From positions 62,001 to 126,000 of the IMG/VR virus record IMGVR_UViG_3300020473_000010: a stretch of 64,000 nt of DNA. One strand, written 5' to 3'. The first letter of the stretch is position 1; each line of letters begins with the position of its first letter. The position numbers were made by a program, and so were the translations under genes. Below the pieces are notes generated by a model, which did no database searches, was not told where the DNA came from, and worked only from the letters and a program-made list of their open reading frames with translations. This document shows positions 2,178 to 52,831 of this stretch, piece by piece.

Positions 2178-3113
2178 ATGGGTTTAACAAGAAGAGAAAG
2201 GAAATTAATTCTTTCTGCAAACCGTCTTTTTGAAGTTGCATCTGAAGTAGAAATTGAATTACCTCGTGTAATTGAAAGACCTGAACTTCATGTTTTTGAT
2301 TTTGATGAAACTCTTGCTTTTCCACCTGAAGCAATATACAAATTGTATCTAGGATACTACATGGGAAAAGAACACGGTTTTATTGCTGCTAGTCCCTCTA
2401 TAGTAAAAGATGCTTTATCGATTTTGCTAGCAATTGGAGTAGAACCAATTGAAACTCTCCAAGAGCCAAACTCTGAATTCGGGCCAACTACAGTTTTGCA
2501 TTTGGACTATAAAGGTTATGAAACCGCAAGAGAAAAAATAAATTCAGAATTTAGAAATCAAGTTTTGGGACCTTCTTTACCAACAAAATTAAAAAGTGGG
2601 AAATGGAAGAAAATGGTTTCGGTTTATTATCAGTTTCCGGAAGCCCATGAATTAAGCCCTGAATTATATCAGCCATTACCAGCAACGGAAATCATGAAAG
2701 AAAAAATCCTAGCCGGACACCACGTTTATATTTGTACAGCCCGGGCCGGAAATGAAAACATAGAAAATATAATGGATTTTCTTAAATTTAACAAGATAAA
2801 AATCCCAAAAGAAAATATTTTTGCAGTTGGAAGTGAAAATAAAAGTAATACTATCAATCGATTAATTGAATTGCATAACACTGAAGATGTCTTCTTTTAT
2901 GATGACAGTTCAAAAAATGTCTTAAACGTTATGGATGATTGCTGTTCTGCTGCACAGAAATTAACTGTTATAAAATATTCTAGAAAAACTCCTGGGGCCA
3001 TTGATTCTACAACTGTTTGTGGGATCAAAACTGAAAATAAAAAACGGAACAACAGATATTTATCTGAGTCCCGTTCTGTGTTTAGGAAGTGGAGAAAAAT
3101 GAGCGGAATTTAA
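2178..3113 (+). CDS. HAD-family phosphatase (RNA-repair-type HAD-like)
   Basis: HVFDFDETL, ICTAR, K, FYDDS HAD motifs; C-terminal RKWRKMSGI. Confidence 0.7.
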   Translation: MGLTRRERKLILSANRLFEVASEVEIELPRVIERPELHVFDFDETLAFPPEAIYKLYLGYYMGKEHGFIAASPSIVKDALSILLAIGVEPIETLQEPNSEFGPTTVLHLDYKGYETAREKINSEFRNQVLGPSLPTKLKSGKWKKMVSVYYQFPEAHELSPELYQPLPATEIMKEKILAGHHVYICTARAGNENIENIMDFLKFNKIKIPKENIFAVGSENKSNTINRLIELHNTEDVFFYDDSSKNVLNVMDDCCSAAQKLTVIKYSRKTPGAIDSTTVCGIKTENKKRNNRYLSESRSVFRKWRKMSGI

Positions 3114-3733
3114 AAGAGGCCTTTAAAGATCCCTTTGAGAGTAGAGCCGGCTTTTTTCATTGCTCCTTTGAATTCACTTTCTTCTTCTGGATAATCAATA
3201 TCTGTAAACTGTGCAGAAGAATCAGCATTAGTAACTGTTTCATCGAAATTTCCTCTTTGTTTTAAAAATTCTTCAAAAACCGAATTGACATCTCCTTCGT
3301 TTTCTTTTATAGTTCCTGTTTTTCCTTCTAACCAACCTGGAAACCATTCGATAAATTCTTTTTCTAGTTTATCATCAACCAATTCTTTGTAACCATCATC
3401 TATATGGAATAATCCTAATAATTGGTTTCCATCGGCCGCACTGTCATCGGCATTTCTTGCTGCTTTTGTTGCGTCATATGCGTCTTTTACTTTTCCACCT
3501 AAAGAAATTCCGTCAGCAAACAGTTTTACTCCTGGCAGATATTCTAAAACGTTTTTAATAACTTTTCCAGTTGCTTCTCCACGTTGTTCGATATCTTTTA
3601 GCTCTTCAGCTTTGACGGCTAAGGCTAAAATCGTTTTCATTTCTTCCCATTTAGTTACTTTTCTTTCTTTTAATAAAGAAGAAATTTTAGTTTCTAAAAG
3701 GAATTTATTCCATTCTTTTTTTGCTGAATACAT
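3110..3733 (-). CDS. Hypothetical protein with propeptide-like leader
   Basis: 207 aa ORF, GGAG RBS, N-terminus KKEWNKFLLE. Confidence 0.75.
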   Translation of the reverse strand: MYSAKKEWNKFLLETKISSLLKERKVTKWEEMKTILALAVKAEELKDIEQRGEATGKVIKNVLEYLPGVKLFADGISLGGKVKDAYDATKAARNADDSAADGNQLLGLFHIDDGYKELVDDKLEKEFIEWFPGWLEGKTGTIKENEGDVNSVFEEFLKQRGNFDETVTNADSSAQFTDIDYPEEESEFKGAMKKAGSTLKGIFKGLF

Positions 3734-3742
3734 AATGTCTCC

Positions 3743-3937
3743 TTAATCAACTCTCATAACATCACCGATCTCTTCTTCGGTTTGAGTTCCATCATTCCAC
3801 TGAATAAGTATGCGCCAGCTGTTGCTAGCACTTCCTCCAGTGAAATATGTTTTTATCTTAATAGGAACTAGATGAATTACTTTCCCTTCTTTTCCAATAT
3901 TGTGGAACAAACTTACTTTATCGCCAACTTTGATCAT
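3743..3937 (-). CDS. Small SH3-like protein
   Basis: MIKVGDKV...GKVI...ILIQWNDG; GGAG RBS. Confidence 0.7.
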   Translation of the reverse strand: MIKVGDKVSLFHNIGKEGKVIHLVPIKIKTYFTGGSASNSWRILIQWNDGTQTEEEIGDVMRVD

Positions 3938-3950
3938 TTTATCTCCTAAA

Positions 3951-4331
3951 TTAAATTATTTCGTCAGTATTGAATGCTTTTACTACGCCAGTTTCCATAG
4001 CAATCTGAAACATATCTGCTAATGCCAAAGCAAAACTTTGAGGACAGCCTACTCCAATTTGTCTCATGAGAGGCCGTATAGATTCTAAAACTTCGTGTGG
4101 ATTATTGCAGATAATTTCTGCACTTTTGGAATAGCTATCAGGACACATCGCGGCATCGACATTGTTTAAATTTAAAACTTCTGATTTGAGATTTATTGGA
4201 AGTTCTGGCTGATACATTCCGTCGCCGTATACCGAATAATCTTCTTCTTCGCACCCACATTCTTGTAATAATTGGCGTTGATAATCTCTCCACCATTTAT
4301 GAACATCGTCTCTTCCCCATTTTGCGCTCAT
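3951..4331 (-). CDS. Hypothetical protein
   Basis: 126 aa ORF coupled to upstream gene (ATGA overlap). Confidence 0.7.
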   Translation of the reverse strand: MSAKWGRDDVHKWWRDYQRQLLQECGCEEEDYSVYGDGMYQPELPINLKSEVLNLNNVDAAMCPDSYSKSAEIICNNPHEVLESIRPLMRQIGVGCPQSFALALADMFQIAMETGVVKAFNTDEII

Positions 4332-5314
4332 TTTCTTTCTCCATCGTTTAATCCTAATACTTCTCTGCCATTATGGACTGCAATATTAATTATTTCTTCT
4401 TCGTCATAAATCCTACATGCATCAATTAAAAGTCTTAATTCATTAACAATGTCTCCATCGCAATAAGGCTTGTATAAATCACAAATGTTATCCGACCCTA
4501 TAGCAACACGCAGTCCTCTATTTAGTAATTCATCTACTGGTGTGATCGAATTGTGAATTGGGGCTAATATTTCCGACCTTTTGTGATCAATCCATGCTGA
4601 TGGACAGCAGATAAATGTAAGATCTGCATCGATACACATTTTATATACTTCTTCTCGGTATGTTTTTGGATGACATGCTAAACTTATTGAATGTATTGCC
4701 GTTACTCTGCTTTCTAATCCATGTTCCATGGTTTTTCTAGCTAATAATTCTGTCTCTCTTTCAAACGGGCGGTTATTTTGATCAACATGAACATGTAATC
4801 GTTTTCCAGTTTGTTTTGCCCAATCCATTACTACATCTAGATGTGCAGCTTCTTTTCCAGAATCGGCGCCGGGGAGAGAACCTATAATATCAATAGAATC
4901 AATTACGGTTTCTAAAAGATTTCTTGGTTCTTTTTCTAAAACGCCTTTTAAAGTTTGGCAAGCTATAATTAATTTTATTTCATCGAATTCTAAATCTTCT
5001 TTTGCTATTGTTGCTCCTGTAAGAGCAGTATAGTGAACTACAGGATCAATATCAATAAAGCTACAAACAACTTGAGAATTATAAAATTTTTGAGCCATTA
5101 AAGCATTTTTAATTCTATCTCTATATTCCATGACAGAACAGGTTCGCTTCATTTCATCTATTAGAAACCATTTATCTTGTAAATGACTATTTGTTTTTTC
5201 TAGAGTTTCTCTTGTTATGGTGTAAGCCCTGTCTAAATGTGAATGTGCATTAACATATCCTCCTTCTAGAAGAATTCTGTTAATGACATCAGACAAAGGG
5301 TTAGAATGTGTCAT
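4328..5314 (-). CDS. Metal-dependent amidohydrolase, cytosine deaminase (CodA)-like
   Basis: NAHSHLD, HVHVD, AIHS, IGSDN; likely start ATG 5314 after GAGG. Confidence 0.8.
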   Translation of the reverse strand: MTHSNPLSDVINRILLEGGYVNAHSHLDRAYTITRETLEKTNSHLQDKWFLIDEMKRTCSVMEYRDRIKNALMAQKFYNSQVVCSFIDIDPVVHYTALTGATIAKEDLEFDEIKLIIACQTLKGVLEKEPRNLLETVIDSIDIIGSLPGADSGKEAAHLDVVMDWAKQTGKRLHVHVDQNNRPFERETELLARKTMEHGLESRVTAIHSISLACHPKTYREEVYKMCIDADLTFICCPSAWIDHKRSEILAPIHNSITPVDELLNRGLRVAIGSDNICDLYKPYCDGDIVNELRLLIDACRIYDEEEIINIAVHNGREVLGLNDGERK

Positions 5315-5322
5315 ATAATACC

Positions 5323-5505
5323 TCAATAATCCGGAAAATCGCCGTCCAATCTTTTCCACGATATCCAAAGCCAGCTACTTATAATTAACACACCAAATAA
5401 GAAAAACCAAAAATAATTTCCCGGAAAAGATAAAGAAAAACCGCTGGTAATTAAATAGCCAAATCCTGTACCTAGTAAAAATTCTTTTGTCTTAAATTTA
5501 TCCAT
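5323..5505 (-). CDS. Small two-TM membrane protein
   Basis: Two hydrophobic segments, coupled ORF. Confidence 0.6.
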   Translation of the reverse strand: MDKFKTKEFLLGTGFGYLITSGFSLSFPGNYFWFFLFGVLIISSWLWISWKRLDGDFPDY

Positions 5506-6196
5506 GCTTTGACCACCAAGCTGGTACTTGAATTATTTCTTCCCAGCCCTCATCTAATGTTGGGGGCTCATATCCACTTATCATTCTGTCAATGGCTTCT
5601 GGAGGGATTGTTTTCTTTCTTCCGGTTGTTTCGAAACGTTTTTTAGCTCTAGCCGCTACTGAATCTTTCAAAAAATCAATTTGATTATTCCAGTCAAACA
5701 CAACAGCGATCAATTCATGATCCGGAGCATCTAAAGAATTAATTATTCTTTCTCTTCCTGATTTGTTCATGTTTGTCATGTCAACAATTATTGGTCTTCC
5801 GGATGATTTTGCCTCGACGATTGTTTTTTCATGTTCTGACAAAGCTGTAGCTTGAGCTGTGGCAACTTTATCCCAAACTTTTGGTTCCCAAGTTTTCCAT
5901 TCCAAAGGTTGATCGATCATTTCCCCATATTTTTCACTATATTGAGTTTCTGAATATCCTTTTTCTCCAGGTTGGATTGGTTTAGCAAACATATCGTCAT
6001 AATCAAACCCATGAGCATCTCCAGCCGCATCGGTTCTATCATCCATACTAATAATATATGGGTTTTTTATACCAAATTTGGGACCTTCTTTTTTTAACCA
6101 GGTTGATTTTCCTACCCCGGGAGGTCCTATTAAAAAAAATATTTTTAAATGAGATATTTCTTCTTTTAGTATTCTTTTCCAATTTGCTCCAAACAT
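5498..6196 (-). CDS. P-loop kinase, polynucleotide-kinase/AAA_33-like
   Basis: GPPGVGKST Walker A, IIVDMTNMNKSGR, PPTLDEGW; likely start 6196 (MFGANWKRILKEE). Confidence 0.8.
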   Translation of the reverse strand: MFGANWKRILKEEISHLKIFFLIGPPGVGKSTWLKKEGPKFGIKNPYIISMDDRTDAAGDAHGFDYDDMFAKPIQPGEKGYSETQYSEKYGEMIDQPLEWKTWEPKVWDKVATAQATALSEHEKTIVEAKSSGRPIIVDMTNMNKSGRERIINSLDAPDHELIAVVFDWNNQIDFLKDSVAARAKKRFETTGRKKTIPPEAIDRMISGYEPPTLDEGWEEIIQVPAWWSKHG

Positions 6197-6236
6197 ATTT
6201 CTTTCCTTTGGCTGTAATATTCTTATATAATTTAAC

Positions 6237-6665
6237 CTACATATTGTCAATATACACGGATTTTGAGTATTTTTCAATTATTATTAAATCTTCTAAATTA
6301 AAATCTTTTCCTTCTCCATTAGTCATTACTTTCCCGCGAGGAGGATTTCCTGGAATACTTTGAATTGAAACTAATATTCCAATTACTTTTTTAGGCGCCT
6401 GTTGGTATCCATGAGAATAGTGCATTACTAAATCACCAATCTCTGCCAACTCAAATCGTAGGTCGTTTTTTATATTACTAACATCAATGTATTGGCAAGA
6501 TTCTTTCGAAACTCTTATATGCGATTTCCAAAAACTATCTATTGGTTCAACAATTAAATCAAAAAGAGCAATTTCAATAACTCTACCTAATTTAAAATCG
6601 TAAACCTTTCCTTTGTTGTCTTTAGTAGATCCAACTAAGCAAACAACATCATTTATTTTATACAT
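6237..6665 (-). CDS. Hypothetical protein, tandem SH3-like repeats
   Basis: INDVVC...GRVI and IGDLVM...IGIL units. Confidence 0.65.
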   Translation of the reverse strand: MYKINDVVCLVGSTKDNKGKVYDFKLGRVIEIALFDLIVEPIDSFWKSHIRVSKESCQYIDVSNIKNDLRFELAEIGDLVMHYSHGYQQAPKKVIGILVSIQSIPGNPPRGKVMTNGEGKDFNLEDLIIIEKYSKSVYIDNM

Positions 6666-6692
6666 ACATTTATAAGTATATAAAAAACAAAA

Positions 6693-6765
6693 AGCTCTCG
6701 ATAGGATTCGAACCTACGACCGGCTGATTACAAATCAGCTGCTCTACCAACTGAGCTACGAGAGC
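6693..6765 (-). tRNA. tRNA-Thr (UGU)
   Basis: GCTCTCGTAGCTCAGTTGGTAGAGCA-GCTGA TTTGTAA TCAGC-CGGTCGTAGGTTCGAATCCTATCGAGAGC; CCA not encoded. Confidence 0.95.
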
Positions 6766-6777
6766 AAAAAATAATTT

Positions 6778-7221
6778 TTAAGTTATTCCAAAACCGTCAT
6801 CATCCCATGATGTTCCAAATTCTGGACCTCCATGAACTAGTCCTCCTGCTGGTTTTAATATAGATGATTTATTTCCATGCCAAGCTGCTGTTAATCCAAT
6901 TGTTCCTAATATTGATCTAGCAAATATTTCCATATGTTCTGTTTCCATATCAGAAATATATGACAATGATTTAAATTCAATTATTCCTTTTCTTACAAAA
7001 ATAATACAAATTGGATTTCCATGAAGATCTTCTATTAATATTCCGTCTATATCTCCAGTAGCAAATATTTTTCCCTTTGGGTCTTGGGATAAAGTTTCAG
7101 CCAGAGTTTTTGCAAATTCGTTTCTTTCATCATCTTCGTTAATATCGGTTTTTATTCCATTAACAGCGCAATTTATAATGAACGCTCTTACTTTTCCATT
7201 TTCTAAATCAGAATTGTCCAT
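6778..7221 (-). CDS. Hypothetical protein
   Basis: 147 aa ORF with AAGGA RBS. Confidence 0.7.
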   Translation of the reverse strand: MDNSDLENGKVRAFIINCAVNGIKTDINEDDERNEFAKTLAETLSQDPKGKIFATGDIDGILIEDLHGNPICIIFVRKGIIEFKSLSYISDMETEHMEIFARSILGTIGLTAAWHGNKSSILKPAGGLVHGGPEFGTSWDDDGFGIT

Positions 7222-7259
7222 CTTTCCTTCTCGTTTAACTTTTTATTATTGTATATCAG

Positions 7260-7961
7260 TTAATCATCATGTTCAGAATTTTTTGATTTTAATTTTATTT
7301 CATTGAGATAATTTTTTAATCTTACTTGAGGACCGTTTATCATAACATATGTTGCATGCTCAACCCAATCTCCGGTATTAACATATGTTCGTATTTTTTC
7401 GTTTTCGTCGATCCAGATCATTGCTTCCGGGGTATGAGTATGGCCCATGATAAAAACATCGGTATCACCGCTATATTTCATAATATCTCTAACATATTTA
7501 ATTCTTTTCTTTCTGGTTTTAAACCAATCATAAAATTTGTTAGAATTCCAGTTAAATACTCTTTCTAAAACGTCACCAATTAAAGCAACTATTTTCATTA
7601 TAAATCTTTTTTGCAGAATCCCACCTTCATGTTGGTCTCCGTGTTCAATTGCAAATGATCTTCCGCTTTCTTCAAATTCGTATCTTTTTGTAAAGCTTAC
7701 ATTTGCTAATGAAGAATCAATAAATGCTTCGAAGGCTCGATCATGATTTCCTACAACATAAACGATAGGTTTGTTTAATTTTCTTAAAATATCAAATATT
7801 TTCTTTGTATCTTCTGTAAATCTAGGTACTTTTAAAAATTCTATTACATCTCCCGCAAGAACCAATTCGTCATAATCTTTCTTTTCTAATAATGATATTA
7901 ACAGTTCTTCCCGGGAAAATGTAGATCCTAAATGAAGATCGGATATAACCAATCTTTTCAT
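7260..7961 (-). CDS. Calcineurin-like metallophosphoesterase (LpxH-like)
   Basis: SDLHLG, GDVIE, GNHD, HGD, GHTH. Confidence 0.85.
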   Translation of the reverse strand: MKRLVISDLHLGSTFSREELLISLLEKKDYDELVLAGDVIEFLKVPRFTEDTKKIFDILRKLNKPIVYVVGNHDRAFEAFIDSSLANVSFTKRYEFEESGRSFAIEHGDQHEGGILQKRFIMKIVALIGDVLERVFNWNSNKFYDWFKTRKKRIKYVRDIMKYSGDTDVFIMGHTHTPEAMIWIDENEKIRTYVNTGDWVEHATYVMINGPQVRLKNYLNEIKLKSKNSEHDD

Positions 7962-8656
7962 ATTAGTGACTCTAAAGTTGCTAGCGAATTATTAACCCCC
8001 GCTAGAGAAGCTGGTGGAAAATGAATAATTCCTTTGCCTCCCGATGATTCAAACATAGTTGTGTATTTTTCTCGATCATCAATTAAAATACATCTAGCTC
8101 CTGGAAAAAGGGGAGGAATTGAACTTTTGTCCTGGCGAATAAAAATTCTTTCAGGAGGAATTGGGGTATTATTAGTTAGCCAGTATTTCTTGGCTTTAAT
8201 GCTTTCATCATCAACAGGGGCTGATAAAATATAAACATTCTCTTCTCCAACTAGGTTAAAACATTGCTGGATTAATTGATCAGCCCCTGGGGCTTTTGGT
8301 AATTTTGCCCAATGATCATAATTTTTTGTTACTGGTGCAAATTGATATCTTTTTATCAATAATTCCCACTGGGTTAATTCTTCTTTTGCGTCTTTTTTTC
8401 TCATTAGTTCGCGCATGAATTCTTCTGTTATTGGAAAAACTTTGTCAATTCCTTCATAATTCCGGAGTTTTTCCAGTTTTTTTCCTCGAGATCTTGGATA
8501 TTCAATATTGCTGCTAATATCTTTATTCAAAACAGTAACCAATCCCTTTGTAAAACCTACTAATACTCCATCCATATCTAAAAAAACAATTATTCTTGAT
8601 TTAGGCTTAGACTCCATATAGTTTCTCCATGTTTCCATTAATTCTTTTGTTTTCAT
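7958..8656 (-). CDS. HAD 5'(3')-deoxyribonucleotidase-like phosphatase
   Basis: FLDMDGVL, ILSAP, LIDD; leader MKTKELMETWRNYMES. Confidence 0.8.
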   Translation of the reverse strand: MKTKELMETWRNYMESKPKSRIIVFLDMDGVLVGFTKGLVTVLNKDISSNIEYPRSRGKKLEKLRNYEGIDKVFPITEEFMRELMRKKDAKEELTQWELLIKRYQFAPVTKNYDHWAKLPKAPGADQLIQQCFNLVGEENVYILSAPVDDESIKAKKYWLTNNTPIPPERIFIRQDKSSIPPLFPGARCILIDDREKYTTMFESSGGKGIIHFPPASLAGVNNSLATLESLI

Positions 8657-9219
8657 AGGTTTATCTTTTCTCCGTTGGAAATATTGGCCAAAGAATCTCC
8701 TGGGTTTCCAGTGAGGTTTGTTAAAGATATGTGGAATATTCTATCAATTTCCTGAGGTGTTACATTAGAAATTTGTTTAATTTCTGTAGTATCAAGATTT
8801 GCTTCTAACAAAATAGTGTTTAGAAATTTACGTAGATCGGTGTGATTTTTGATTTTTATGAAAGTACTTGTTCTTCCATCTTCAGATTTAATTCCTATAT
8901 CCCCAAACTCCAAAAGAGGAGGAAGAATTGATAAAACACGGGGTGATTTAAATAATGCTTTTAACGCTTTATCTCCTCTTAGACCCTCTCGAGAAGTAAC
9001 TTTTTTTGGAACAGACTGATGTAAAAGAGTTACATGTAATTTTTCAATAGGTTTTTGGTTGGGAAACTTTTCTTGAATTGCTAGCTGTAGATCTTGAAGA
9101 AACGATATATCAGTTGGTTTAATCTGTATAATCCCAGTAAATTTTTTAGGTAAATTACTAGAAGACATTATAGACCCTTCGTTTAAAAATTTTAGCCAAG
9201 ATTCCATTATTTTTTTCAT
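8653..9219 (-). CDS. 2H phosphoesterase
   Basis: Two HxT/S motifs LHVTL and FHISL; likely start 9219 (MKKIMESWLKFLNEG). Confidence 0.75.
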   Translation of the reverse strand: MKKIMESWLKFLNEGSIMSSSNLPKKFTGIIQIKPTDISFLQDLQLAIQEKFPNQKPIEKLHVTLLHQSVPKKVTSREGLRGDKALKALFKSPRVLSILPPLLEFGDIGIKSEDGRTSTFIKIKNHTDLRKFLNTILLEANLDTTEIKQISNVTPQEIDRIFHISLTNLTGNPGDSLANISNGEKINL

Positions 9220-9297
9220 TTTTTCTCCGTTTTTTAATCTCATAATAATTTATCTTATTTTGAAACTAACTACACAGATTTATAGATTTATTTTAAA

Positions 9298-9384
9298 TGG
9301 TGCCTCAGGAGGGGCTCGAACCCTCACGCCTTTACAGGCAACGGATTTTAAGTCCGTTGTGTCTACCTATTCCACCACCAAGGC
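9298..9384 (-). tRNA. tRNA-Leu (UAA)
   Basis: GCCTTGG acceptor, ACGGA CTTAAAA TCCGT anticodon arm, long variable arm, GTTCGAG, encoded CCA. Confidence 0.95.
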
Positions 9385-9916: not shown

Positions 9917-10026
9917 TGAAATCTCCTTTTGATTTTTGATTATAGTCAATATATTATGATAAATTTTATCAGTGTATAAGTTTTTTCCCAATAAATATTC
10001 TCCTAAATGGGAAAACCAAATTTATT

Positions 10027-42011: not shown

Positions 42012-43072
42012 TTAATTAACCCCGCTAATTTTTGCCAACGTTCTGAAATAATTTGATCAGCTTTAGATTGGACAGATTCAGGCTGGATTGGTTCATCAAC
42101 ATTAAATTTACCAGATTGTAATCCAGCGTATATGTCGCTTTTTACTTTTTTCTTATTGCCCATTGATTCATGGTCAAATTGAGGCATATCAGCTCTATCC
42201 GGCGCGCTTTTATTCGCCGGAAGAGTACTTAAATTAGCACCGACTTTCTTTGCTATAGCATCGATGATTACCTCTTCAGAATCACCAACAGAAAACCCGG
42301 CCCATTCAGCAGCTGTTTCGCTTTCTGCAACATCTTTTAAAAACTGATCGTTTAATACTGCACCTGGGGCATCTTCATCAGTTTGTTTCCCTTTGTTGTC
42401 TTTTATCATTTTGGCGATTTCTTCAGCAGATTTTCCCATAATATTAGTAGTAAACGGGTCACTTTTAGATGGCTGGGGTAAATTTGGGTCCTTATATGCG
42501 GCGATGGCTAATTGGGCGCCAGCTAATTTTTCGCTAGTATTAGAGCCTGGCAAATCAATTTCTTGAGCGCTTACATTGCCTTCTTTTTCGCTAATTGCCC
42601 AAATTCCTGACCATCGATGGTGTCCATCAATTACTTCTCCTCCGGATACGGAGATTGAACCAGGAGCAGTAGAAGTTTTTGATGATATCATTTTTTCTAA
42701 AGTTCCAATATCAGAAAGGGGCCAGCCCACAGATTGCATCATATCTATTTCTTTTTGGGTAGGAATAAGTGAACCAACAGATACTGAGGATGCTCCATCA
42801 ATTTCAACAACATCATCATCTTTTTTTTCGTCGTAATCTCCTTGTAGAACTTTTTTGAGCAATTCAGGATCGTCAGTATTATCAACTAGATCTCTCACCT
42901 CGGCGGGGCCGCTTTGGGCAGCTTTTGAGACTGCTGCTGCAGTTTGCTCCTCATCTCCGAGAGAATATTTTTCATCGTCTCCTTCAAATAAAATACTGGA
43001 TAAAGATGGATTTTTAATTTCGTGAATCTCTTTTAGGATTATTGATCTGAGTTGTTTTGTTGAGATTTTCAT
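42008..43072 (-). CDS. ParB/Srx-like domain protein with leader (paralog 2)
   Basis: MKISTKQLRSIILKE (start 43072), LIPTQ, VIDGHHRW, APDRADMP, ERWQKLAGL. Confidence 0.75.
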   Translation of the reverse strand: MKISTKQLRSIILKEIHEIKNPSLSSILFEGDDEKYSLGDEEQTAAAVSKAAQSGPAEVRDLVDNTDDPELLKKVLQGDYDEKKDDDVVEIDGASSVSVGSLIPTQKEIDMMQSVGWPLSDIGTLEKMISSKTSTAPGSISVSGGEVIDGHHRWSGIWAISEKEGNVSAQEIDLPGSNTSEKLAGAQLAIAAYKDPNLPQPSKSDPFTTNIMGKSAEEIAKMIKDNKGKQTDEDAPGAVLNDQFLKDVAESETAAEWAGFSVGDSEEVIIDAIAKKVGANLSTLPANKSAPDRADMPQFDHESMGNKKKVKSDIYAGLQSGKFNVDEPIQPESVQSKADQIISERWQKLAGLIK

Positions 43073-44379: not shown

Positions 44380-45627
44380 TTATCCCATTACAGATGTATC
44401 TCTTTGCAAGAACTCTAGATTAGACTGCATAGCTTTTCTGGCGTCATTTGCTTTTCTGGCTTTTGTCATTCCGTTCCAGCGTTTTTTAATTTTCTCGATT
44501 ACTGCATCCGCTTCTTCAGGAGATAGTTGAGATTTTTTTGATAGTGGATCGTAAACACCAGCTCTTTTTAATTTTGCTAATTCTTTCATAGCTGGAATAA
44601 TGATTGCTTGATGAGACATGTATTTAAACATTTCACTATCCATTAAGGCATTTTCGTCTTTTTTCAAATCATCAATATGTTCCTGATCGAGGAGCTTGGA
44701 AAAAAGCATGGCTTCATAAAAAGCATCTCTAGCAAATTCAGAACGAACTAAGCTATTGAGACGGTCTGTTAATTGGGGCGCGTTTTTGGTTGCCCTTAGG
44801 ATGGGATAGATTTCTCGCTCTAATTTATTTGTAATGCCGCTTGGACCTTTAACGGATGGGTAAACATTGCTGGCCACAATGTCCTCAAGGCCAAAAGCGG
44901 TTGCCATTTCTGGCCTATATCCAGCAACCTTTGTTGGATCATGTTCACCGGTTTCCTCCATAAAATCGCGTATATCATCAACATCAGGAACCCATTCGTC
45001 ATCTAATTCCGAGTAATCATCATCTGGACGATAGAGGTTGAGATCATCTCCTTGTTTCCATTTTCTTGCAGCGTCTCTTTGACGTGCTCCATATCTTGCT
45101 TCAGGCATAACACTCCTATTTTTATTGGTTACATTAGTAATGTAACCCGTTCTTTTAAGTGCTACACGGTTTTTTAGTTTTCTTTTTCTATTTTCTTTTA
45201 CTGATTTAATTGGAACATCAATATCTTTATCACCCAAAAATAAATCTTGAAGGTCTGGTTTGTTTCCTTGTTCAATAGCCTTTTCGCGAAGATTCATTAA
45301 CTCATTGTAGAAAAACTCTCTTTCCGAATCTGGAATTCCGGAAGCTAATGCTTCTGCCGCGGCACTAAGTTCTTTTCCACATGTAGGAACCCAGTCTGGA
45401 TCTTCTACTGGTGGAAGATCTTTTTGAAGCTGTGTTGAAGTTTGATCTAATGCAATTATGGGTTGGGGAGATGGTACTGTTGTTTCTATATCTTCTTTTC
45501 TGGTATCCCCTAATGTACCGGCAACTTTGTCATCGGTGGATGCCCTATGAGAAACACCAGAATCTGTGTTGTATTCAAATAGCCAGTCTTTAATTGCTGA
45601 ACGAAGTTTTGATTCTTTAATTTTCAT
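44380..45627 (-). CDS. Hypothetical (putative virion) protein with leader
   Basis: MKIKESKLRSAIKDWLFE. Confidence 0.75.
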   Translation of the reverse strand: MKIKESKLRSAIKDWLFEYNTDSGVSHRASTDDKVAGTLGDTRKEDIETTVPSPQPIIALDQTSTQLQKDLPPVEDPDWVPTCGKELSAAAEALASGIPDSEREFFYNELMNLREKAIEQGNKPDLQDLFLGDKDIDVPIKSVKENRKRKLKNRVALKRTGYITNVTNKNRSVMPEARYGARQRDAARKWKQGDDLNLYRPDDDYSELDDEWVPDVDDIRDFMEETGEHDPTKVAGYRPEMATAFGLEDIVASNVYPSVKGPSGITNKLEREIYPILRATKNAPQLTDRLNSLVRSEFARDAFYEAMLFSKLLDQEHIDDLKKDENALMDSEMFKYMSHQAIIIPAMKELAKLKRAGVYDPLSKKSQLSPEEADAVIEKIKKRWNGMTKARKANDARKAMQSNLEFLQRDTSVMG

Positions 45628-46046: not shown

Positions 46047-46414
46047 TTTTTTAATCTCTCTTTTATTGCTTCTGTGGCTTCTTCTGCAGTATTAATTTTG
46101 TTTATTTTTTCTTGTTCTGCTTTTGCAAGTTTTTTAAGTACTTCTTCATGTTCTAAATTAATTTTATTTACAGAATTAATAAATTCTGATTGGGCTTCTT
46201 GTTTCTTTTTTGTTTCTAAATCATGTGACTGCTGAAGTGCGTTTAATTGAGACTTTTTTGCCTCTGCTGCTTTTTTATAAATTTTAACAGTGTTGCCTTT
46301 TCGTAAAAGTATTGACACGACAATAGGAATAGAAATTCCTAAAAGAAATTTCCAATGGATTTTGCACCATTCCCATGTTTTTTTTAACCACACAATCGAA
46401 ACTGACCAAATCAT
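46043..46414 (-). CDS. Membrane-anchored coiled-coil protein (inner spanin-like candidate)
   Basis: N-terminal TM then coiled coil; overlaps the next gene. Confidence 0.55.
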   Translation of the reverse strand: MIWSVSIVWLKKTWEWCKIHWKFLLGISIPIVVSILLRKGNTVKIYKKAAEAKKSQLNALQQSHDLETKKKQEAQSEFINSVNKINLEHEEVLKKLAKAEQEKINKINTAEEATEAIKERLKK

Positions 46415-46734
46415 TATTCTCTATTCTCCTTTACAGCCATCATTCTTTCGTAAAGTTGTTGTAAAAGATCTTCTATATCTAAGGCCCTTGGATCATCAAA
46501 GGATTCATATGAATCTAACCAATATTGAAGATAATTTAAATGACTATCTACAGTTTGCTCAAGAGTATTTGGGCCAGAAGGTAACGGTTCTAAACCACGG
46601 TCTCCAGGGCCGCCGGGACCCCATTCTTTTATTAAATTCTTTCTTTGTTCATTTGATCCAAAATCAAAGTTATTATATAGCTTTGATTTCTCTTCTTTAA
46701 TAATTCTCTTAAGTTGTCTTTTTGTAATTTTCAT
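46414..46734 (-). CDS. MKITKRQL-leader small protein
   Basis: MKITKRQLKRIIKEE; second LIKEW site. Confidence 0.85.
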   Translation of the reverse strand: MKITKRQLKRIIKEEKSKLYNNFDFGSNEQRKNLIKEWGPGGPGDRGLEPLPSGPNTLEQTVDSHLNYLQYWLDSYESFDDPRALDIEDLLQQLYERMMAVKENRE

Positions 46735-46977
46735 TTATATGCCCATCTCTAGAGATACTTCTGCAACCTCTTCTTCTGACATTCCATCAACCCACTCGAT
46801 TGCATAATCATAATTGATCCAATCGGGTTCTTCACCAAGATATTCAGCAGCAATTTGAATTAGTTCATCGTCCGGTAATCCAAACAGGTAGTCAGTAACA
46901 ATCTGTCGGTTTTCTCGAAGTAACTTTAGTTTTTCTTCTTTAATAATTCTCTTAAGCTGTCGTTTTGTAATTTTCAT
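46735..46977 (-). CDS. MKITKRQL-leader small protein
   Basis: MKITKRQLKRIIKEEKLKLLRE. Confidence 0.85.
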   Translation of the reverse strand: MKITKRQLKRIIKEEKLKLLRENRQIVTDYLFGLPDDELIQIAAEYLGEEPDWINYDYAIEWVDGMSEEEVAEVSLEMGI

Positions 46978-47423
46978 TATCTACTTCCTAATTCAGATCT
47001 GAATTTATCTTCACTAAAAACGGACGCTCTTTCAAATGCCTGTAGAATTGTTTTAATATCATCGATTATTCCTTCATCTCCACCATGGCGGAAAACCATG
47101 GAGACACCAGGGCCAGCTAATTGTATGTACCAATACTCCATATCACCACCGTAGGGTCGATAAGTGTAACTGTACTCACACTGAAATACGTATTCATCCT
47201 TTGATAACACCAACGTGAATTCACCATCGCCTACTTCGCTCTCCATGTATCCCTCTAGAGAATCCAATGACCAACCATGGCCTTGGGCTACCTCCTGAAA
47301 TTGTTGGGGAAGTCTTTTCCAAGCATCCTCAGCGTATTCATTCTCAAATTCAAGACCTTCTGCTAAGATGTTTTGCTTCTCTTCTCTGATAATTCTTTTA
47401 AGTTGTCTTTTTGTAATTTTCAT
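46977..47423 (-). CDS. MKITKRQL-leader protein
   Basis: Start 47423 (GGAGG RBS): MKITKRQLKRIIREEKQNILAE. Confidence 0.85.
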   Translation of the reverse strand: MKITKRQLKRIIREEKQNILAEGLEFENEYAEDAWKRLPQQFQEVAQGHGWSLDSLEGYMESEVGDGEFTLVLSKDEYVFQCEYSYTYRPYGGDMEYWYIQLAGPGVSMVFRHGGDEGIIDDIKTILQAFERASVFSEDKFRSELGSR

Positions 47424-49037: not shown

Positions 49038-49732
49038 TATTCGTGCCCTCCTGCAGTTACTTTACCGATTTTTTCAGCAATTTTAATTCTTTTTTCAATT
49101 CGGTCCCAATCTAATTCTTTCATCATGGCATATACATATGATTTTCTATCGCTCATATAATCTCTAAAATAAGAATGTTCCCAGCAATCGATTACTATAA
49201 CTGGATAAGAAGCAAATGGAACATTGTTTGAATGCAAATCGACAACAACATTAATATATCGTTGCAAGAAAATATTATAAACAGTACATGCCCATCCATT
49301 TCTGGCCGATAAAGCTGTTGCTACAAAATCTTTTTGCCATTCATCAAATGAACCAAAATCTCTCTCTAGCCTCATAAAAGCTAAAGAATCCATAGTAATA
49401 ATGGAATTTGGGTCTGCAATATTTTCGAAATACCATGCATGTAAAAAAGCCGCGTTTAAATTATAGACTTCATCAATTTTAAGACTTCTAAATTCTGAAC
49501 TATTAAGATCTGCATCATCTCGAGAAACCGTGTCCAATTTTGCTGAAACAGTATTTAAACTATCGATGTATTTAGCCATTAACTCTTGATGAGTTTTTTT
49601 GGTTTTTTCAGAAAGTAATTCTGTAGGCAATCTATATTTTTGAGCCTTTGTAACATAGGACTCGTTCAGCGTTTTTTCTTTTTGGACACCAAGAGAATCT
49701 CTAATTGTTTTTTTGATTGTTTCATCGTTCAT
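49037..49732 (-). CDS. Fe/Mn superoxide dismutase-like protein with N-terminal extension
   Basis: THQE, AFLHAWYF, DFGSFDEW, IDCWEHSYF; four metal ligands present. Confidence 0.8.
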   Translation of the reverse strand: MNDETIKKTIRDSLGVQKEKTLNESYVTKAQKYRLPTELLSEKTKKTHQELMAKYIDSLNTVSAKLDTVSRDDADLNSSEFRSLKIDEVYNLNAAFLHAWYFENIADPNSIITMDSLAFMRLERDFGSFDEWQKDFVATALSARNGWACTVYNIFLQRYINVVVDLHSNNVPFASYPVIVIDCWEHSYFRDYMSDRKSYVYAMMKELDWDRIEKRIKIAEKIGKVTAGGHE

Positions 49733-50202
49733 TATTCTACCTCGTAGTCTTCTTCAAATTCTGATTTTTTAACAGCCAAAAGACTGGTTTTAGGAAGTTT
49801 AAGATCTGCATCTTTTTCTAAATCTACCCTGTGTGAGGTTACTTGTTCAACTTCATCACCGGAAGGATCTCCTCCTTTGATTCTCCCAATATCTACACCA
49901 CTTAAATTAATAGTTGCTGTAGTTTCGGAAAGCGGCTGTCCCTTGGGTTCAAACCGAGGTTGATCTGGGTGCCGAAGATAAACAATAGCATCATCACCCT
50001 CTCCTTCGACATGGTCTACCGTGTATTCGTACCCTGAAGCTTTATGACGAGCTTTGAGCCCTTGAGACAACAGCTGATTACCACGCTTATCATACATGTC
50101 GGTTTCTTTTAAATCAGCTTCTAAAGCAACCTCAACCAATCTTTTTTTGTATTCTTCACGAATAATCTTTATAATATGTCGTTCCGTTAATTTTTTGCGC
50201 AT
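49732..50202 (-). CDS. Leader-bearing protein with SH3-like core
   Basis: KLTERHIIKIIREE...LVE; GLKARHKASGYEYTV. Confidence 0.75.
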   Translation of the reverse strand: MRKKLTERHIIKIIREEYKKRLVEVALEADLKETDMYDKRGNQLLSQGLKARHKASGYEYTVDHVEGEGDDAIVYLRHPDQPRFEPKGQPLSETTATINLSGVDIGRIKGGDPSGDEVEQVTSHRVDLEKDADLKLPKTSLLAVKKSEFEEDYEVE

Positions 50203-50212
50203 TTATAAACTC

Positions 50213-52831
50213 CTAATCTTTAATTATGCCGGCCAATCTTTGCCATCTATAAACGTTTTCTTGAAATAGCGGTTTCGGCAATACGTCTTCCAAAGCTTGA
50301 TTCAGTGCTTTTCTAAATCCTGCTGCCCCAGCTTTTTTATAATCATCTAAAAATCCTTTGAAAATGGCCGGTTGTAATTCTGGGTCTGGATTGCCAGCGG
50401 CTCCGAAAGCTTGATGGAACTTAGGAAATCCTGCTTTTTTAATATATGCGGGTTTTTTAGAGTCTCCAGCTTCGGCGGCGGATTTGATATCAAACCCGAA
50501 TTCATCTTCGAAATATTTTAAGAAATTTTCATTATCAAGCAAATCAAGCGCTTTAGTAGTTAATTCGTCTTGGCCTTTAATTTTATCAGTTAAATCCGAA
50601 AGAAACTCTTTTAAAAGAACTTTTGATTCTATAATAAATGGAAGATCTGCATTTAATTCTTTTAGCCCTGTTAAGAAAAGAGCCACTGCATCTCCATCGA
50701 TTTTTTTATCTATTTTTTTAATCGCATCAACTGTAGCGCCGATTTGTATTTTGGGAAGTCCACCTAATTCCCATTCAATATCAAATTTATCTTTAAAGAA
50801 TTTCTTTACTTCTTTATTTTTAAAATATTTTTGCATCTGAGCTTCGGCTTCTTTGTCGTTAGAAGCTGCATTATATATTAAACCCGGAAGGAAGTCGTCC
50901 CATTTAGTTTTTTCTTCAACTAATAATGAATTTAAAGAATTTAAATGAATTGATTCAAGTTTTAATTTTTCCCATTGGTTTTCATCGTGTTGGCCGACGC
51001 CTTTCGGACCTTGGCGAAATATATCATAAATCTTGGCTAATATTTCAGGCTTTAATTCGGTTGGGTTTGGAATTTCTTTTATAAAATCTTCTTTAGAAAA
51101 GGTTCGTATATCATCTCCGGTTTCATCTTGAGGTTCTGCATTCAAAGTGTCAGGTGTATCAACTTCAACATCATTGACGTCATCATCTTCGAGTTTTCCT
51201 AAATTCAATACTGCCTTAATAAAATCTTCTAAATCTTTTGGGGTTTTGATGTCCAATTTAGCTAAATCAGCAGATAAGTCTTTTGCCTCAGGTTCGGTAT
51301 TGGGATCAATAATAATTTCTTCATTGTTGTCGTCGTTCGTTAATGTAACTGGAGAATTGTCGTTAGTTAATCCAGCAATGGCCTTGTTTAAATCACTAGC
51401 GGCCCCATCTTCTAGTGTCGAAGTAAGATCTGATGCTTCTTCTGCTTTTTCTACTCCTAAAACACCCCAAATCTTTGCAGCAGTTTCTTTGTCAGAGTCG
51501 AATTTAAATTTATAGTCAATGCCTTTTATTAATTCTGAGATTTCAGTTATAGCTTCCGTTAATAAGTTTTTAAATCCAGCATGATGGAAAAATTTAGATT
51601 CTTTAAAGATTTCTTGAACTGGTTTTTCTGATGCAGCCATTACCAAAGATAAAACAGCTTTATCCATTTCATCAATGTCTTTAAAAGCCTCATGTTTATT
51701 CATTGCCTGCATAAAAGGTTCACCATCATCAAATAGCTTTTCTACTTCTGGAGAAACTTCTACAGTAAGCATATCTTTTAAAGTGCTTTCTGCTTTATCA
51801 ATAACCTCTGATTTGATTCCCATTCCAAATTCTTTAAAATCGAACCATCCCATGGAAAAAATTCCGCTTTTGCCATCTTCTCCCAACAAAATCTTTGGAG
51901 ACAAAGTAGTATCTTGTTCAATTTCGAATTCTAGCAAATCTTTCATATCTGCAATTGCTTTTAATTCTTTCTCTGCTTGCTTTGCAGCGTTTTCGATATT
52001 TTTTCCTAATTTCCCAAAAACTCTTTTTGCTTCATTTTCAGCTTGAATAAATTTTTTATTTAATTTTTCAACTTCTTTCTTTTTTGCATCATCCCAGCCT
52101 TCATGCCACCCAGAAACCCACTGCAATATTGTTGATGGCTTATATCCGTCAGGATTTAAATCTGGTGGAGGAGGACCATCTGTTGCAAACGATATTAATC
52201 TTATTTTTTCCATCTTTTCTGCAACATCCGGTGTAATCCCAGAAGCTTCTAGAAGAAGCGAAGCTAAGCTTGATTTATGAATAAAGTTAAAAGATTCTTT
52301 TTGTTGATTTCCTCCAGACTCTTCTTGAGATTGATCATCTTTCTTTTCGCTGGAAGCATCAGAACCTGACAATTCTTTTGGGAGACCTTGTAGAAAATTA
52401 ATTTCTTCATCTGAAATTGCAACTGCATTCATCCAGCCGGCGATATCTGTAATGACAGATTCAAACATGTCTAGATTCATTTTTGCATGGGTTGCAAGGT
52501 ATTTTATTTTAGTAGCTGCTTCGTCTTCCTGTTTATCTTTTGCGTTTGTTCCAGTAATTGCACCAGCAAAACGAGAAAACATTCCAGGTTCTTCCATCGA
52601 TTTTTCGCTGATTGTTCCGGCCGCTTTTTCTAAGTTTTTAAATACTGTTGATACTTTTTGTTTCAACGATTTTAAATCATCGGTATCGTCAGGCATTCTT
52701 TCAAATCTTAGAATGACTTCATCTAAAAGAGAGTCTAGGTCTTGTTGTGCTTGAAGGATTTCTCCTTCAGTCAAAAGCCTTGCTTCCGTAATTAATTTAC
52801 ATTTTTTTCTTGATTCAATAAATATATTCAA
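50213..52831 (-). CDS. Large acidic multi-module protein (putative processed virion polyprotein)
   Basis: 872 aa; repeated ES...L(L)xE segments; C-terminal RWQRLAGII. Confidence 0.75.
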   Translation of the reverse strand: MNIFIESRKKCKLITEARLLTEGEILQAQQDLDSLLDEVILRFERMPDDTDDLKSLKQKVSTVFKNLEKAAGTISEKSMEEPGMFSRFAGAITGTNAKDKQEDEAATKIKYLATHAKMNLDMFESVITDIAGWMNAVAISDEEINFLQGLPKELSGSDASSEKKDDQSQEESGGNQQKESFNFIHKSSLASLLLEASGITPDVAEKMEKIRLISFATDGPPPPDLNPDGYKPSTILQWVSGWHEGWDDAKKKEVEKLNKKFIQAENEAKRVFGKLGKNIENAAKQAEKELKAIADMKDLLEFEIEQDTTLSPKILLGEDGKSGIFSMGWFDFKEFGMGIKSEVIDKAESTLKDMLTVEVSPEVEKLFDDGEPFMQAMNKHEAFKDIDEMDKAVLSLVMAASEKPVQEIFKESKFFHHAGFKNLLTEAITEISELIKGIDYKFKFDSDKETAAKIWGVLGVEKAEEASDLTSTLEDGAASDLNKAIAGLTNDNSPVTLTNDDNNEEIIIDPNTEPEAKDLSADLAKLDIKTPKDLEDFIKAVLNLGKLEDDDVNDVEVDTPDTLNAEPQDETGDDIRTFSKEDFIKEIPNPTELKPEILAKIYDIFRQGPKGVGQHDENQWEKLKLESIHLNSLNSLLVEEKTKWDDFLPGLIYNAASNDKEAEAQMQKYFKNKEVKKFFKDKFDIEWELGGLPKIQIGATVDAIKKIDKKIDGDAVALFLTGLKELNADLPFIIESKVLLKEFLSDLTDKIKGQDELTTKALDLLDNENFLKYFEDEFGFDIKSAAEAGDSKKPAYIKKAGFPKFHQAFGAAGNPDPELQPAIFKGFLDDYKKAGAAGFRKALNQALEDVLPKPLFQENVYRWQRLAGIIKD

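What the first reader, a model, noticed from the sequence alone, without database searches (positions are those of the whole stretch)
2178..52831. About 25 unrelated proteins share a basic amphipathic leader ending in [IL]-x-E: a capsid-targeting/propeptide system
Seen: MKITKRQL(R/K)RII(R/K)E at 26556, 26780, 27057, 27441, 27801, 46734, 46977 and 47423. Variants are MKISTKQLRSIILKE (43072), MKIKESKLRSAIKDWLFE (45627), MKTTETNLRIIIESIILES (42011), KLTERHIIKIIREE (50202), and a W-type group KEWNKFLLE (3733), NWKRILKEE (6196), METWRNYMES (8656), MESWLKFLNE (9219). Established: T4 internal proteins use the N-terminal capsid targeting sequence MKTYQEFIAE and are cut after (I/L)-X-E by prohead protease gp21. 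Inference: this phage tags a large, diverse cargo set (enzymes and orphan peptides) for packaging and ejection into the host.
Basis: partly seen in the sequence, partly recalled or inferred. Interest (0 to 1): 0.75.

Follow-up and report, generated by a model that had tools for sequence, protein, structure and literature searches.

The report
Shared capsid-targeting-like leader on phage proteins
An uncultured 289-kb T4-like marine phage puts the same 14-residue basic N-terminal helix, ending in a prohead-protease-type cut site, on more than 40 otherwise unrelated small proteins. This is most likely a much enlarged version of the T4 tag that loads proteins into the capsid for injection into the host.

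Summary
The core observation is real and larger than reported. A profile of M-K-I-T-K-R-Q-L-[KR]-R-I-I-[RK]-E finds 28 copies in the genome, 9 of them in the window. All lie on the coding strand and all sit on a start codon. The next best score is far lower, and reversed-sequence controls give none. A second class of the same length (M-K-x-L-R-x-Y-I-R-x-Φ-L-L-E) and a third (M-R-L-x-E-S-x-L-R…Φ-Φ-E) raise the total to at least 41. Three related contigs carry 13 to 31 each.

Conservation stops abruptly after Glu14. Codons vary synonymously, upstream DNA is unrelated, and the protein bodies are unrelated, acidic and rarely shared between relatives.

The genome has a T4-type head module with a gp21-like Peptidase_S77 that keeps its His and Ser. 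By alignment to T4 gp23, the capsid protein's maturation site is L-L-R-E|A. A conserved small head-module protein begins with a leader-like sequence.

The "W-type" group is not above chance, and "about 25" in the window is really about 12. This is a new variant of the T-even internal-protein system.

The parts
26431..26556 (-). 41-aa ORF with type-A leader (codons 1-14 = 26515-26556); possibly a truncated copy
   Evidence: (34.3 bits)
26553..26780 (-). 75-aa ORF with type-A leader MKITKRQLRRIIRE (26739-26780)
   Evidence: (33.7 bits)
26782..27057 (-). 91-aa ORF with type-A leader (27016-27057)
   Evidence: (33.0 bits)
27082..27441 (-). 119-aa ORF with type-A leader (27400-27441)
   Evidence: (31.6 bits)
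27454..27801 (-). 115-aa leader-bearing unit (leader 27760-27801, Lys instead of Glu at position 14). It lies in frame inside the 477-aa ORF 27454-28887, with no stop codon before it.
   Evidence: (23.1 bits); the upstream part matches phrog_415 polynucleotide kinase
41748..42011 (-). 87-aa ORF with a divergent, type-B-like leader MKTTETNLRIIIES
   Evidence: the ortholog in G002 starts MKTLRETIRRIILE
42008..43072 (-). 354-aa ORF with a divergent type-A leader MKISTKQLRSIILKE
   Evidence: (22.1 bits)
44380..45627 (-). 415-aa ORF with a type-C leader MKIKESKLRSAIKDWLFE. Orthologs keep ...LFE; one ortholog lacks the leader.
46414..46734 (-). 106-aa ORF with type-A leader (46693-46734)
   Evidence: (32.3 bits)
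46735..46977 (-). 80-aa ORF with type-A leader (46936-46977)
   Evidence: (32.9 bits)
46977..47423 (-). 148-aa ORF with type-A leader (47382-47423). The AF2 model has a helix at residues 5-23, then a folded alpha/beta body.
   Evidence: (32.6 bits)
49732..50202 (-). 156-aa ORF with an A-like leader, offset by two residues (MRKKLTERHIIKIIRE)
   Evidence: score 26.7; 24.1
3110..9243 (-). Four 'W-type' N-termini (3733, 6196, 8656, 9219/9243). They are not shown to belong to the system. Two are enzymes (AAA_33 kinase, NT5C nucleotidase).

Best explanation
The leader is a capsid-targeting propeptide. This is a 289-kb uncultured T4-like jumbo phage. Its 14-residue basic amphipathic N-terminal helix comes in three classes:
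- type A: M-K-I-T-K-R-Q-L-K/R-R-I-I-R/K-E
- type B: M-K-x-L-R-x-Y-I-R-x-Φ-L-L-E
- type C: a longer variant

Proposed mechanism (inferred):
1. The helix docks a protein onto the scaffolding core of the assembling prohead. It does so by mimicking the N-terminus of a conserved head-module protein.
2. Once the shell has closed, the gp21-type prohead protease cuts after the Glu of Φ-Φ-x-E and releases the mature protein inside the head.
3. The mature proteins are mostly small (median precursor 125 aa), acidic, folded and different in every related phage. They are then delivered into the host together with the DNA, most plausibly as anti-defence or host-takeover factors.

Shown here:
- the leader, its copy number, its N-terminal position, its sharp boundary and selection at the peptide level
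- the unrelated and hypervariable bodies
- a T4-type protease with catalytic residues
- a matching predicted cleavage site in the capsid protein

Inferred, not shown: docking to the core, cleavage, packaging, ejection and function in the host.
For: 1. The signal is specific. There are 28 type-A copies in the genome and 109 leaders of 12 bits or more in four related genomes. 123 of 133 hits sit on ATG, GTG or TTG, and reversed controls give none.
2. The boundary is sharp. Information is 2.2-4.3 bits per position for residues 1-14, 2.1 at position 15 (E/A/S), and 1 bit or less afterwards. Ile11, Ile12 and Glu14 are near-invariant: 81, 85 and 85 of 90.
3. Selection acts on the peptide. Leu8 uses CTN and TTR codons and Arg uses AGA or CGN. 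Upstream DNA identity is 0.28, which is random.
4. The leader is an amphipathic helix. Its hydrophobic moment is 0.79 against 0.36 for shuffles. The AF2 model places a helix at residues 5-23 ahead of a confident alpha/beta body.
5. The genome has a T4-type head module: Peptidase_S77, a gp23-type capsid protein, and protease His78 and Ser131/132 aligned with T4 gp21.
6. Other head proteins have cut-site-like sequences at the aligned or N-terminal positions.
   - The capsid protein has L-L-R-E|A where T4 gp23 has L-T-E|A.
   - The scaffold-like protein starts ...AIAE|A, like T4 gp22 ...LIAE|A.
   - The protease starts ...LLTE, like T4 gp21 ...LLIE.
7. The conserved 135-aa head-module protein starts MPKKVTRSLLKEIVKE, or MAKISRNALKGLVKE in relatives. 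It scores above about 99.997% of background windows in all four genomes.
8. The bodies are unrelated and acidic, with median pI 4.5 against 5.9 (p = 1e-13). They are rarely conserved: 18 of 89 have a homolog in a relative, against 313 of 665 other short proteins. None is shared by all four genomes.
9. There is a T-even precedent. The internal proteins Ip1-3 share only an N-terminal leader that directs packaging, and they inhibit host restriction enzymes (PMC12373910, PMC3012670, PMC5694885).
10. The leader co-occurs with the protease. 11 of 15 further leader-bearing viral records have Peptidase_S77, and the 4 without are 50% complete or less.
11. In G002 a leader cluster lies directly after the capsid gene.
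Against: - There is no direct evidence of packaging or cleavage.
- The complex prediction of protease plus cargo gave no answer.
- The leader shows no sequence similarity to the T4 sequence MKTYQEFIAE, and the leader profile finds nothing in T4.
- Mature parts are acidic, whereas T4 internal proteins are basic.
- Forty or more cargo species, about 12% of genes, would be far beyond any characterised phage.
- Some carriers look like ordinary enzymes: a zeta/AAA_33 kinase and an HD domain.
- The clusters lie among replication and metabolism genes, and expression timing is unknown. No promoter motif could be extracted.
- Half of the leaders have Glu at P1', which is not seen in the T4 sites examined.
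- The head-module protein with the leader-like N-terminus is not detectably homologous to T4 gp67 or gp68.
- The nearest cultured relative, Flavobacterium phage immuto, has the protease but no leader.
Confidence: 0.6

Rival explanations
1. The leader is an uncleaved targeting or interaction helix unrelated to the capsid. It would bring many different effector bodies to one common intracellular partner or place. Candidates are nucleic acid, the ribosome, the membrane, a phage-made compartment, or a chaperone such as the phage's own GroEL.
For: The helix is very basic (pI about 11.7) and amphipathic. Carriers include enzymes. The clusters sit among non-structural genes. The phage encodes GroEL and a sigma factor.
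Against: This does not explain why conservation ends exactly at a Φ-Φ-x-E motif matching the capsid protein's predicted maturation site. It also does not explain why a head-module protein shares the leader. No partner is identified.
Confidence: 0.2
2. The leader is only the conserved remnant of one expanding paralog family, or a homology patch that promotes cassette shuffling by recombination. It would have no targeting role of its own.
For: The genes are tandemly clustered. Identical-codon use is somewhat above expectation, 0.65 against 0.48. Subfamilies share longer N-terminal stretches, EEKQKLLKE or EEYSRLKRRGLIRE. Some neighbours are fused in frame.
Against: The leader is nearly identical across genomes whose capsid proteins are only 60-69% identical, while bodies show no similarity. 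Synonymous sites vary and the flanks are unrelated, so 42 nt of imperfect identity makes a poor recombination substrate. Three leader classes keep the same length and the same end motif.
Confidence: 0.1
3. The conservation is at the mRNA level: an A-rich, unstructured 5' coding region that boosts translation initiation, possibly linked to phage-modified ribosomes.
For: Codon choice within the leader is biased to AGA, ATT and ACA. The window encodes tRNA-Arg(TCT) and tRNA-Thr(TGT), which read AGA and ACA.
Against: Amino acids are conserved through different codons, including changes at the first codon base for Leu and Arg. The hydrophobic periodicity and the acidic end residue are protein features. 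Types B and C differ in nucleotide sequence but keep the peptide architecture.
Confidence: 0.05
4. The leader is a RiPP-type recognition sequence: one modifying enzyme would process many precursor peptides with hypervariable cores, as with prochlorosins.
For: Many precursors combine a conserved leader with a hypervariable remainder, and they are clustered.
Against: The 'cores' are 60-400 residues and are folded proteins or enzymes. The leader is only 14 aa. No Pfam family, and so no modifying-enzyme domain, was detected in the ORFs flanking the in-window clusters that were scanned.
Confidence: 0.02

Closest known systems
T-even phage internal proteins (T4 IPI, IPII, IPIII; more than 10 Ips across T-evens) with the capsid targeting sequence MKTYQEFIAE, cleaved by gp21
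   Same: Both have a short N-terminal leader shared by otherwise non-homologous small proteins, ending in Φ-x-E. Both phages have a gp21-type Peptidase_S77 and a gp23-type capsid. The genes are clustered and hypervariable between related phages. The leader resembles the N-terminus of a head-assembly protein: T4 gp22 starts MLKEQLIAE, and here the 135-aa head-module protein plays that part.
   Different: The leader sequence is unrelated and strongly basic, 14 residues rather than 10. There are at least three leader classes. There are at least 41 carriers per genome, against 3 in T4. Mature parts are acidic rather than basic. Some carriers are enzymes of 230-415 aa. The leader codons vary, whereas the two T4 copies are identical in DNA. 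Packaging is untested.
Propeptide-bearing ejection and inner-body proteins of phiKZ-like giant phages (SPN3US, 201phi2-1, phiKZ)
   Same: These are giant phages with dozens of head-internal proteins processed by a gp21-related prohead protease after Glu. Their propeptides are thought to act like the T4 targeting sequence (PMC5694885).
   Different: Those propeptides are mostly 100 residues or more, the cut motif is (A/S/G)-x-E, and the carriers are paralog families rather than one short leader on unrelated bodies. The phage studied here has a classical T4-type capsid protein and a scaffold-like gene.
T4 Alt, gp24, gp67 and gp68 N-terminal propeptides
   Same: They are short N-terminal segments ending in L/I-x-E, removed by gp21 (T4 N-termini; PMC5694885).
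   Different: In T4 each has its own sequence. Here one near-identical sequence is reused on many proteins.

Membership tests
T4-type capsid-targeting-sequence / internal-protein system | Short (10-20 aa) leader at the extreme N-terminus of the precursor | tested here: met
   14-residue conserved block. 123 of 133 hits start on ATG, GTG or TTG.
T4-type capsid-targeting-sequence / internal-protein system | Leader ends in the gp21 recognition motif (L/I)-x-E | tested here: met
   Ile12 in 85 of 90 and Glu14 in 85 of 90 for type A. Type B has L-L-E at positions 12-14.
T4-type capsid-targeting-sequence / internal-protein system | Phage encodes a gp21-family prohead protease with catalytic residues, within a T4-type head module | tested here: met
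   PF03420 at 89.9 bits. His and Ser are invariant in the alignment with T4 gp21. PF07068 capsid protein. Module order.
T4-type capsid-targeting-sequence / internal-protein system | The same protease specificity is used on the major capsid protein | tested here: met
   By alignment only: L-L-R-E|A aligns with T4 gp23 L-T-E|A, and the E-A columns are invariant.
T4-type capsid-targeting-sequence / internal-protein system | Carriers share no similarity beyond the leader and vary between related phages | tested here: met
T4-type capsid-targeting-sequence / internal-protein system | Sequence similarity of the leader to MKTYQEFIAE | tested here: not met
   The leader profile finds nothing in T4. The T4 pattern is found only in T4 IPII and IPIII. 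The leader here is basic.
T4-type capsid-targeting-sequence / internal-protein system | Mature proteins are small and basic (DNA-associated) | tested here: not met
   Median body pI is 4.5, and 80% are below 6.
T4-type capsid-targeting-sequence / internal-protein system | Precursor is incorporated into the prohead core, the leader is removed, and the protein is ejected with the DNA | not testable with these tools
   This needs virion proteomics or biochemistry. The complex prediction gave no answer.
RiPP precursor families with a shared leader (e.g. prochlorosins) | Short hypervariable core peptide and a dedicated modifying enzyme | tested here: not met
   Bodies are 60-400 aa, folded or enzymatic. 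No Pfam family, and so no modifying-enzyme domain, was detected in the ORFs flanking the in-window clusters that were scanned.

The most novel reading that the evidence does not exclude
A widespread clade of uncultured aquatic T4-like jumbo and huge phages uses a previously undescribed basic 14-residue capsid-targeting propeptide, in at least three classes. With it each phage would load a very large, genome-specific arsenal of 13 to more than 40 different, mostly acidic, proteins and enzymes into the head for co-injection. That is about ten times the repertoire known for T-even phages. The leader would then serve as a sequence tag that lists hundreds of candidate injected anti-defence or takeover effectors directly from metagenomes.
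Probability: 0.5. Interest if true: 0.78.

Novelty: new variant of a known kind. Interest (0 to 1): 0.62.

Why it matters
Injected phage proteins are the first phage products to meet host immunity. In T4, all three internal proteins turned out to be specific inhibitors of restriction enzymes (PMC12373910). If this leader marks packaged proteins, three things follow.
- It gives a simple sequence handle for finding hundreds of candidate injected effectors in uncultured jumbo phages.
- It shows that the T4 loading principle has been re-invented or diversified with a different peptide.
- It offers a new short tag for loading foreign proteins into large capsids.

It would also explain a sizeable part (about 12%) of the unannotated small genes of these genomes.

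Tried and rejected
- Pfam and PHROGs scans of leader-bearing proteins and their neighbours found no family for the leader or for most bodies.
- tblastn of an 80-aa carrier against 50,697 phage records found nothing. The leader is too short and low in complexity.
- A full-text search for the peptide strings found no paper.
- A large-database protein search returned only two true homologs plus leader-only hits.
- The ESM Atlas look-alike search gave only unnamed clusters below the reliability mark.
- The complex prediction of protease plus a 75-aa carrier gave 'no answer', so it is not used as evidence either way.
- A Foldseek search of the 148-aa carrier model against the PDB found no significant match.
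- Profile comparison of the 135-aa head-module protein with T4 gp67 and gp68 found no homology.
- Upstream k-mer enrichment, meant to find late promoters, recovered only ribosome-binding sites, so expression timing stays unknown.
- The W-type motif was not separable from chance.
- A nucleotide-level explanation was rejected, because the flanks are unrelated and synonymous sites vary.
- A RiPP reading was rejected on the size and nature of the bodies.


Full report
WHAT THE WINDOW IS

The window is bases 62,001-126,000 of a single 288,697-bp IMG/VR virus record. The record is estimated 96% complete, has about 35% G+C, and about 355 of 386 simple ORF calls lie on the minus strand. In the window it encodes:
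- a DnaE-type polymerase, GroEL and S-adenosylhomocysteine hydrolase
- a sigma-70 family protein, peptide deformylase and UvdE
- three tRNAs

Outside the window lies a T4-type head module: terminase, portal, a gp21-like Peptidase_S77, several small proteins, a 576-aa scaffold-like protein and a 654-aa gp23-type capsid protein. The nearest cultured relatives by capsid protein are distant. They are Flavobacterium phage immuto (43% identity), Microcystis phage Mel-JY01 and Rhodothermus phage RM378, with huge uncultured phages also nearby.

CHECKING THE OBSERVATION

I built a profile from the strict copies and ran it on all six reading frames of the genome.
- It gave 28 hits of 13.9-37 bits, followed by a gap down to 6.2 bits.
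- All 28 are on the coding strand and begin on a start codon.
- They cluster at genome 38-60 kb (left of the window), 88.4-89.8 kb (window 26.4-27.8 kb) and 105-109.4 kb (window 43.1 and 46.4-47.4 kb).

All-against-all comparison of N-termini gave 362 pairs at score 40 or more. Shuffled N-termini gave 1 and internal segments gave 3.

Clustering revealed a second leader class of the same length, M-K-x-L-R-x-Y-I-R-x-Φ-L-L-E, at genome 31.9-45.3 kb.

With a joint profile, four related genomes (G000-G003, 242-289 kb) hold 41, 31, 24 and 13 leaders of 12 bits or more. 123 of 133 hits of 8 bits or more lie on ATG, GTG or TTG. Reversed translations give no hit of 10 bits or more, against 122 real ones.

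The four W-type N-termini are not. The pattern occurs 5 times in N-termini against about 1.8 expected, and these proteins have no orthologs in the relatives. So about 12 leader genes lie in the window, not about 25, but at least 41 lie in the genome.

ANATOMY OF THE LEADER

In 90 type-A copies, positions 1-14 carry 2.2-4.3 bits each. Ile11, Ile12 and Glu14 are near-invariant. Position 15 is E, A or S (2.1 bits), and from position 16 information falls to 1 bit or less. Type B also ends in L-L-E at positions 12-14.

The peptide is strongly basic (pI about 11.7) and amphipathic. Its hydrophobic moment is 0.79, against 0.36 for shuffles. An AlphaFold2 model of the 148-aa carrier shows a helix over residues 5-23, followed by a confidently folded alpha/beta body with no PDB match.

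Conservation is at the peptide level:
- Leu8 is encoded by CTN or TTR, and Arg by AGA or CGN.
- The DNA from -40 to -13 is only 28% identical between copies, which is random.
- Only a ribosome-binding site is shared upstream.

Codon identity is somewhat above expectation, 0.65 against 0.48. That fits common descent and a 5'-end codon bias.

THE BODIES

After removing the first 22 residues, the 25 G000 carriers long enough to compare show no BLASTP similarity to each other, apart from one weak pair and one self-overlap. Other properties:
- Median precursor length is 125 aa.
- Bodies are acidic: median pI is 4.5, against 5.9 for other short proteins (p = 1e-13).
- Almost none has a Pfam or PHROG family. 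The exceptions are a zeta/AAA_33-type kinase and an HD domain among type-B carriers.
- Only 18 of 89 short carriers have a homolog in another of the four genomes, against 313 of 665 other short proteins. None is shared by all four.
- Meanwhile the leader is nearly identical across genomes whose capsid proteins are 60-69% identical.

A few leaders lie in frame inside longer ORFs. One is window 27801 inside the ORF 27454-28887. Another is a GTG-started copy at genome 52625. Database proteins with two leaders also exist.

LINK TO HEAD ASSEMBLY

- The protease aligns with T4 gp21 and keeps the His of G-E-L-x-H-P and the Ser-Ser of S-S-R-G.
- The capsid protein aligns with T4 gp23 so that the T4 cleavage site L-T-E|A falls on L-L-R-E|A. 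The E-A columns are invariant, also in immuto.
- The scaffold-like protein begins ...AIAE|A, like T4 gp22 ...LIAE|A. The protease begins ...LLTE, like T4 gp21 ...LLIE.
- A conserved 135-148-aa protein between the protease and the scaffold gene begins MPKKVTRSLLKEIVKE. In the relatives it begins MAKVKRSVLKQLIKE, MAKISRNALKGLVKE and MAKVSRSTLKTLVKE. These score above about 99.997% of 286,008 background windows on the type-A matrix.
- That protein is not detectably homologous to T4 gp67 or gp68, so its role as a core protein rests on its position only.
- In G002 a leader cluster directly follows the capsid gene.
- Of 15 further leader-bearing viral records, 11 have Peptidase_S77. The four without are 27-50% complete.

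DISTRIBUTION

- T4, immuto, Mel-JY01, RM378 and cyanophage Sf-FS3 lack the leader.
- The 484-kb uncultured phage LR756508 has a cluster of small ORFs starting MRLSERKLRRIVKEEI, MKIKEKKLRKIINEEI and the like. This is a diverged form.
- No paper in the searchable library contains the peptide.

INTERPRETATION

The closest known system is the T-even internal proteins. The literature states that they share no homology except an N-terminal leader that directs packaging into the prohead core. It also states that the leader is removed by gp21, and that T4 Ip1-3 each inhibit a specific type IV restriction enzyme (PMC3012670, PMC5694885, PMC12373910). T4 itself has two exact copies of MKTYQEFIAE|A, in IPII and IPIII.

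Several properties here match that system:
- the N-terminal position
- the length
- the end motif and the sharp boundary
- the presence of the protease
- a matching capsid-protein site
- a head-module look-alike of the leader
- the unrelated, hypervariable, clustered cargo

Several things hold me back:
- There is no direct evidence of packaging or cleavage.
- The number of carriers would be unprecedented.
- The mature parts are acidic, whereas those of T4 are basic.
- Some carriers look like ordinary enzymes.
- Expression timing is unknown.
- The complex prediction gave no answer.

RIVALS

- An uncleaved interaction or localisation helix: about 0.2.
- A paralog remnant or recombination patch: about 0.1.
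- An mRNA-level initiation element: about 0.05.
- A RiPP-type leader: about 0.02.

The first rival is the serious one. It fails to explain the boundary at Φ-Φ-x-E and the head-module look-alike.

NOVELTY AND VERDICT

The principle is known from T-even phages. What is new:
- the peptide itself, which is basic, 14 residues long and comes in at least three classes
- the scale, at least 41 carriers or about 12% of genes
- the occurrence in a widespread clade of uncultured jumbo phages

I rate it a new variant of a known kind, with interest 0.62. The decisive test is proteomic: virion or viral-fraction peptides starting at residue 15 of the carriers.

Noticed in passing
outside the window: genome 31,913-45,264 (window -30,087 to -16,736): A second leader class, M-K-x-L-R-x-Y-I-R-x-Φ-L-L-E, sits on about 15 longer proteins (130-370 aa). 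They include a zeta/AAA_33-type kinase and an HD-domain protein. The same class forms a cluster at 253-263 kb in G002.
   Followed up: partly
window 27454-28887 (-): A 477-aa ORF has an N-terminal part matching phrog_415 (polynucleotide kinase; it starts with a DxDxT-type motif). It runs without a stop codon into a leader-bearing 115-aa unit that has its own ATG and ribosome-binding site. Database proteins with two leaders (P0004, P0005, P0008, P0010) show the same arrangement.
   Followed up: partly
window 9671-15660 (-): A run of ORFs has signal-peptide-plus-Cys N-termini (e.g. ...LLALVAC, ...FFIGTIFSC, ...FGLLLGC, ...PLLFSC). This is a cluster of putative lipoproteins with low-complexity, acidic mature parts and no Pfam family.
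   Followed up: no
window 6693-6765, 9298-9384, 15857-15933 (-): Three tRNA genes are present: tRNA-Thr(TGT), tRNA-Leu(TAA) and tRNA-Arg(TCT). The Thr and Arg tRNAs read ACA and AGA, the codons the leader strongly prefers (ACA 21 of 26, AGA 66 of 77).
   Followed up: partly
window 32111-32848, 30561-31124, 33133-34755, 17047-18399, 23590-24513, 57578-61165 (all -): Auxiliary and replication genes are present: a sigma-70 family protein (regions 1.2, 2 and 3), peptide deformylase, GroEL-type chaperonin, S-adenosylhomocysteine hydrolase, UvdE UV endonuclease and a DnaE-type Pol III alpha subunit.
   Followed up: partly
window 1936-2136, 3743-3937, 6237-6665 and many elsewhere in the genome (e.g. 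genome 11421, 19860, 24748, 154335, 155509): A second N-terminal look-alike group consists of small proteins starting MK(I/V)GDLV. These look like an ordinary paralog family of small beta-rich proteins rather than a leader.
   Followed up: no
G003 139110-141020 and 141082-142965 (L041/L042): The related contig G003 carries two tandem full-length copies of the gp23-type capsid gene. Both are about 62% identical to the G000 protein.
   Followed up: no
outside the window: genome 175728-175955 (L018 5728-5955): A 75-aa very basic ORF lies between the head-module genes and looks like ribosomal protein bS21 by eye. Mel-JY01 has an annotated RpsU at the same place, and a clade of bS21-encoding phages is described in PMC9723584. 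Pfam gave no hit at E of 0.001 or better.
   Followed up: partly
L173 936-2228 (LR756508, 484-kb uncultured phage): Inside the diverged leader-gene cluster of this huge phage sits a 430-aa ORF that looks by eye like a TnpB/OrfB-type transposon-associated nuclease (it has a zinc-ribbon-like C-terminus). This was not tested.
   Followed up: no
P0008; IMG/VR contig GVMAG-S-1030632-100_000001: Leader-bearing proteins occur on a 278-kb contig deposited as a 'Euryarchaeota archaeon' MAG and on contigs labelled as a giant-virus MAG. These are probably mis-binned contigs of phages with this leader.
   Followed up: no
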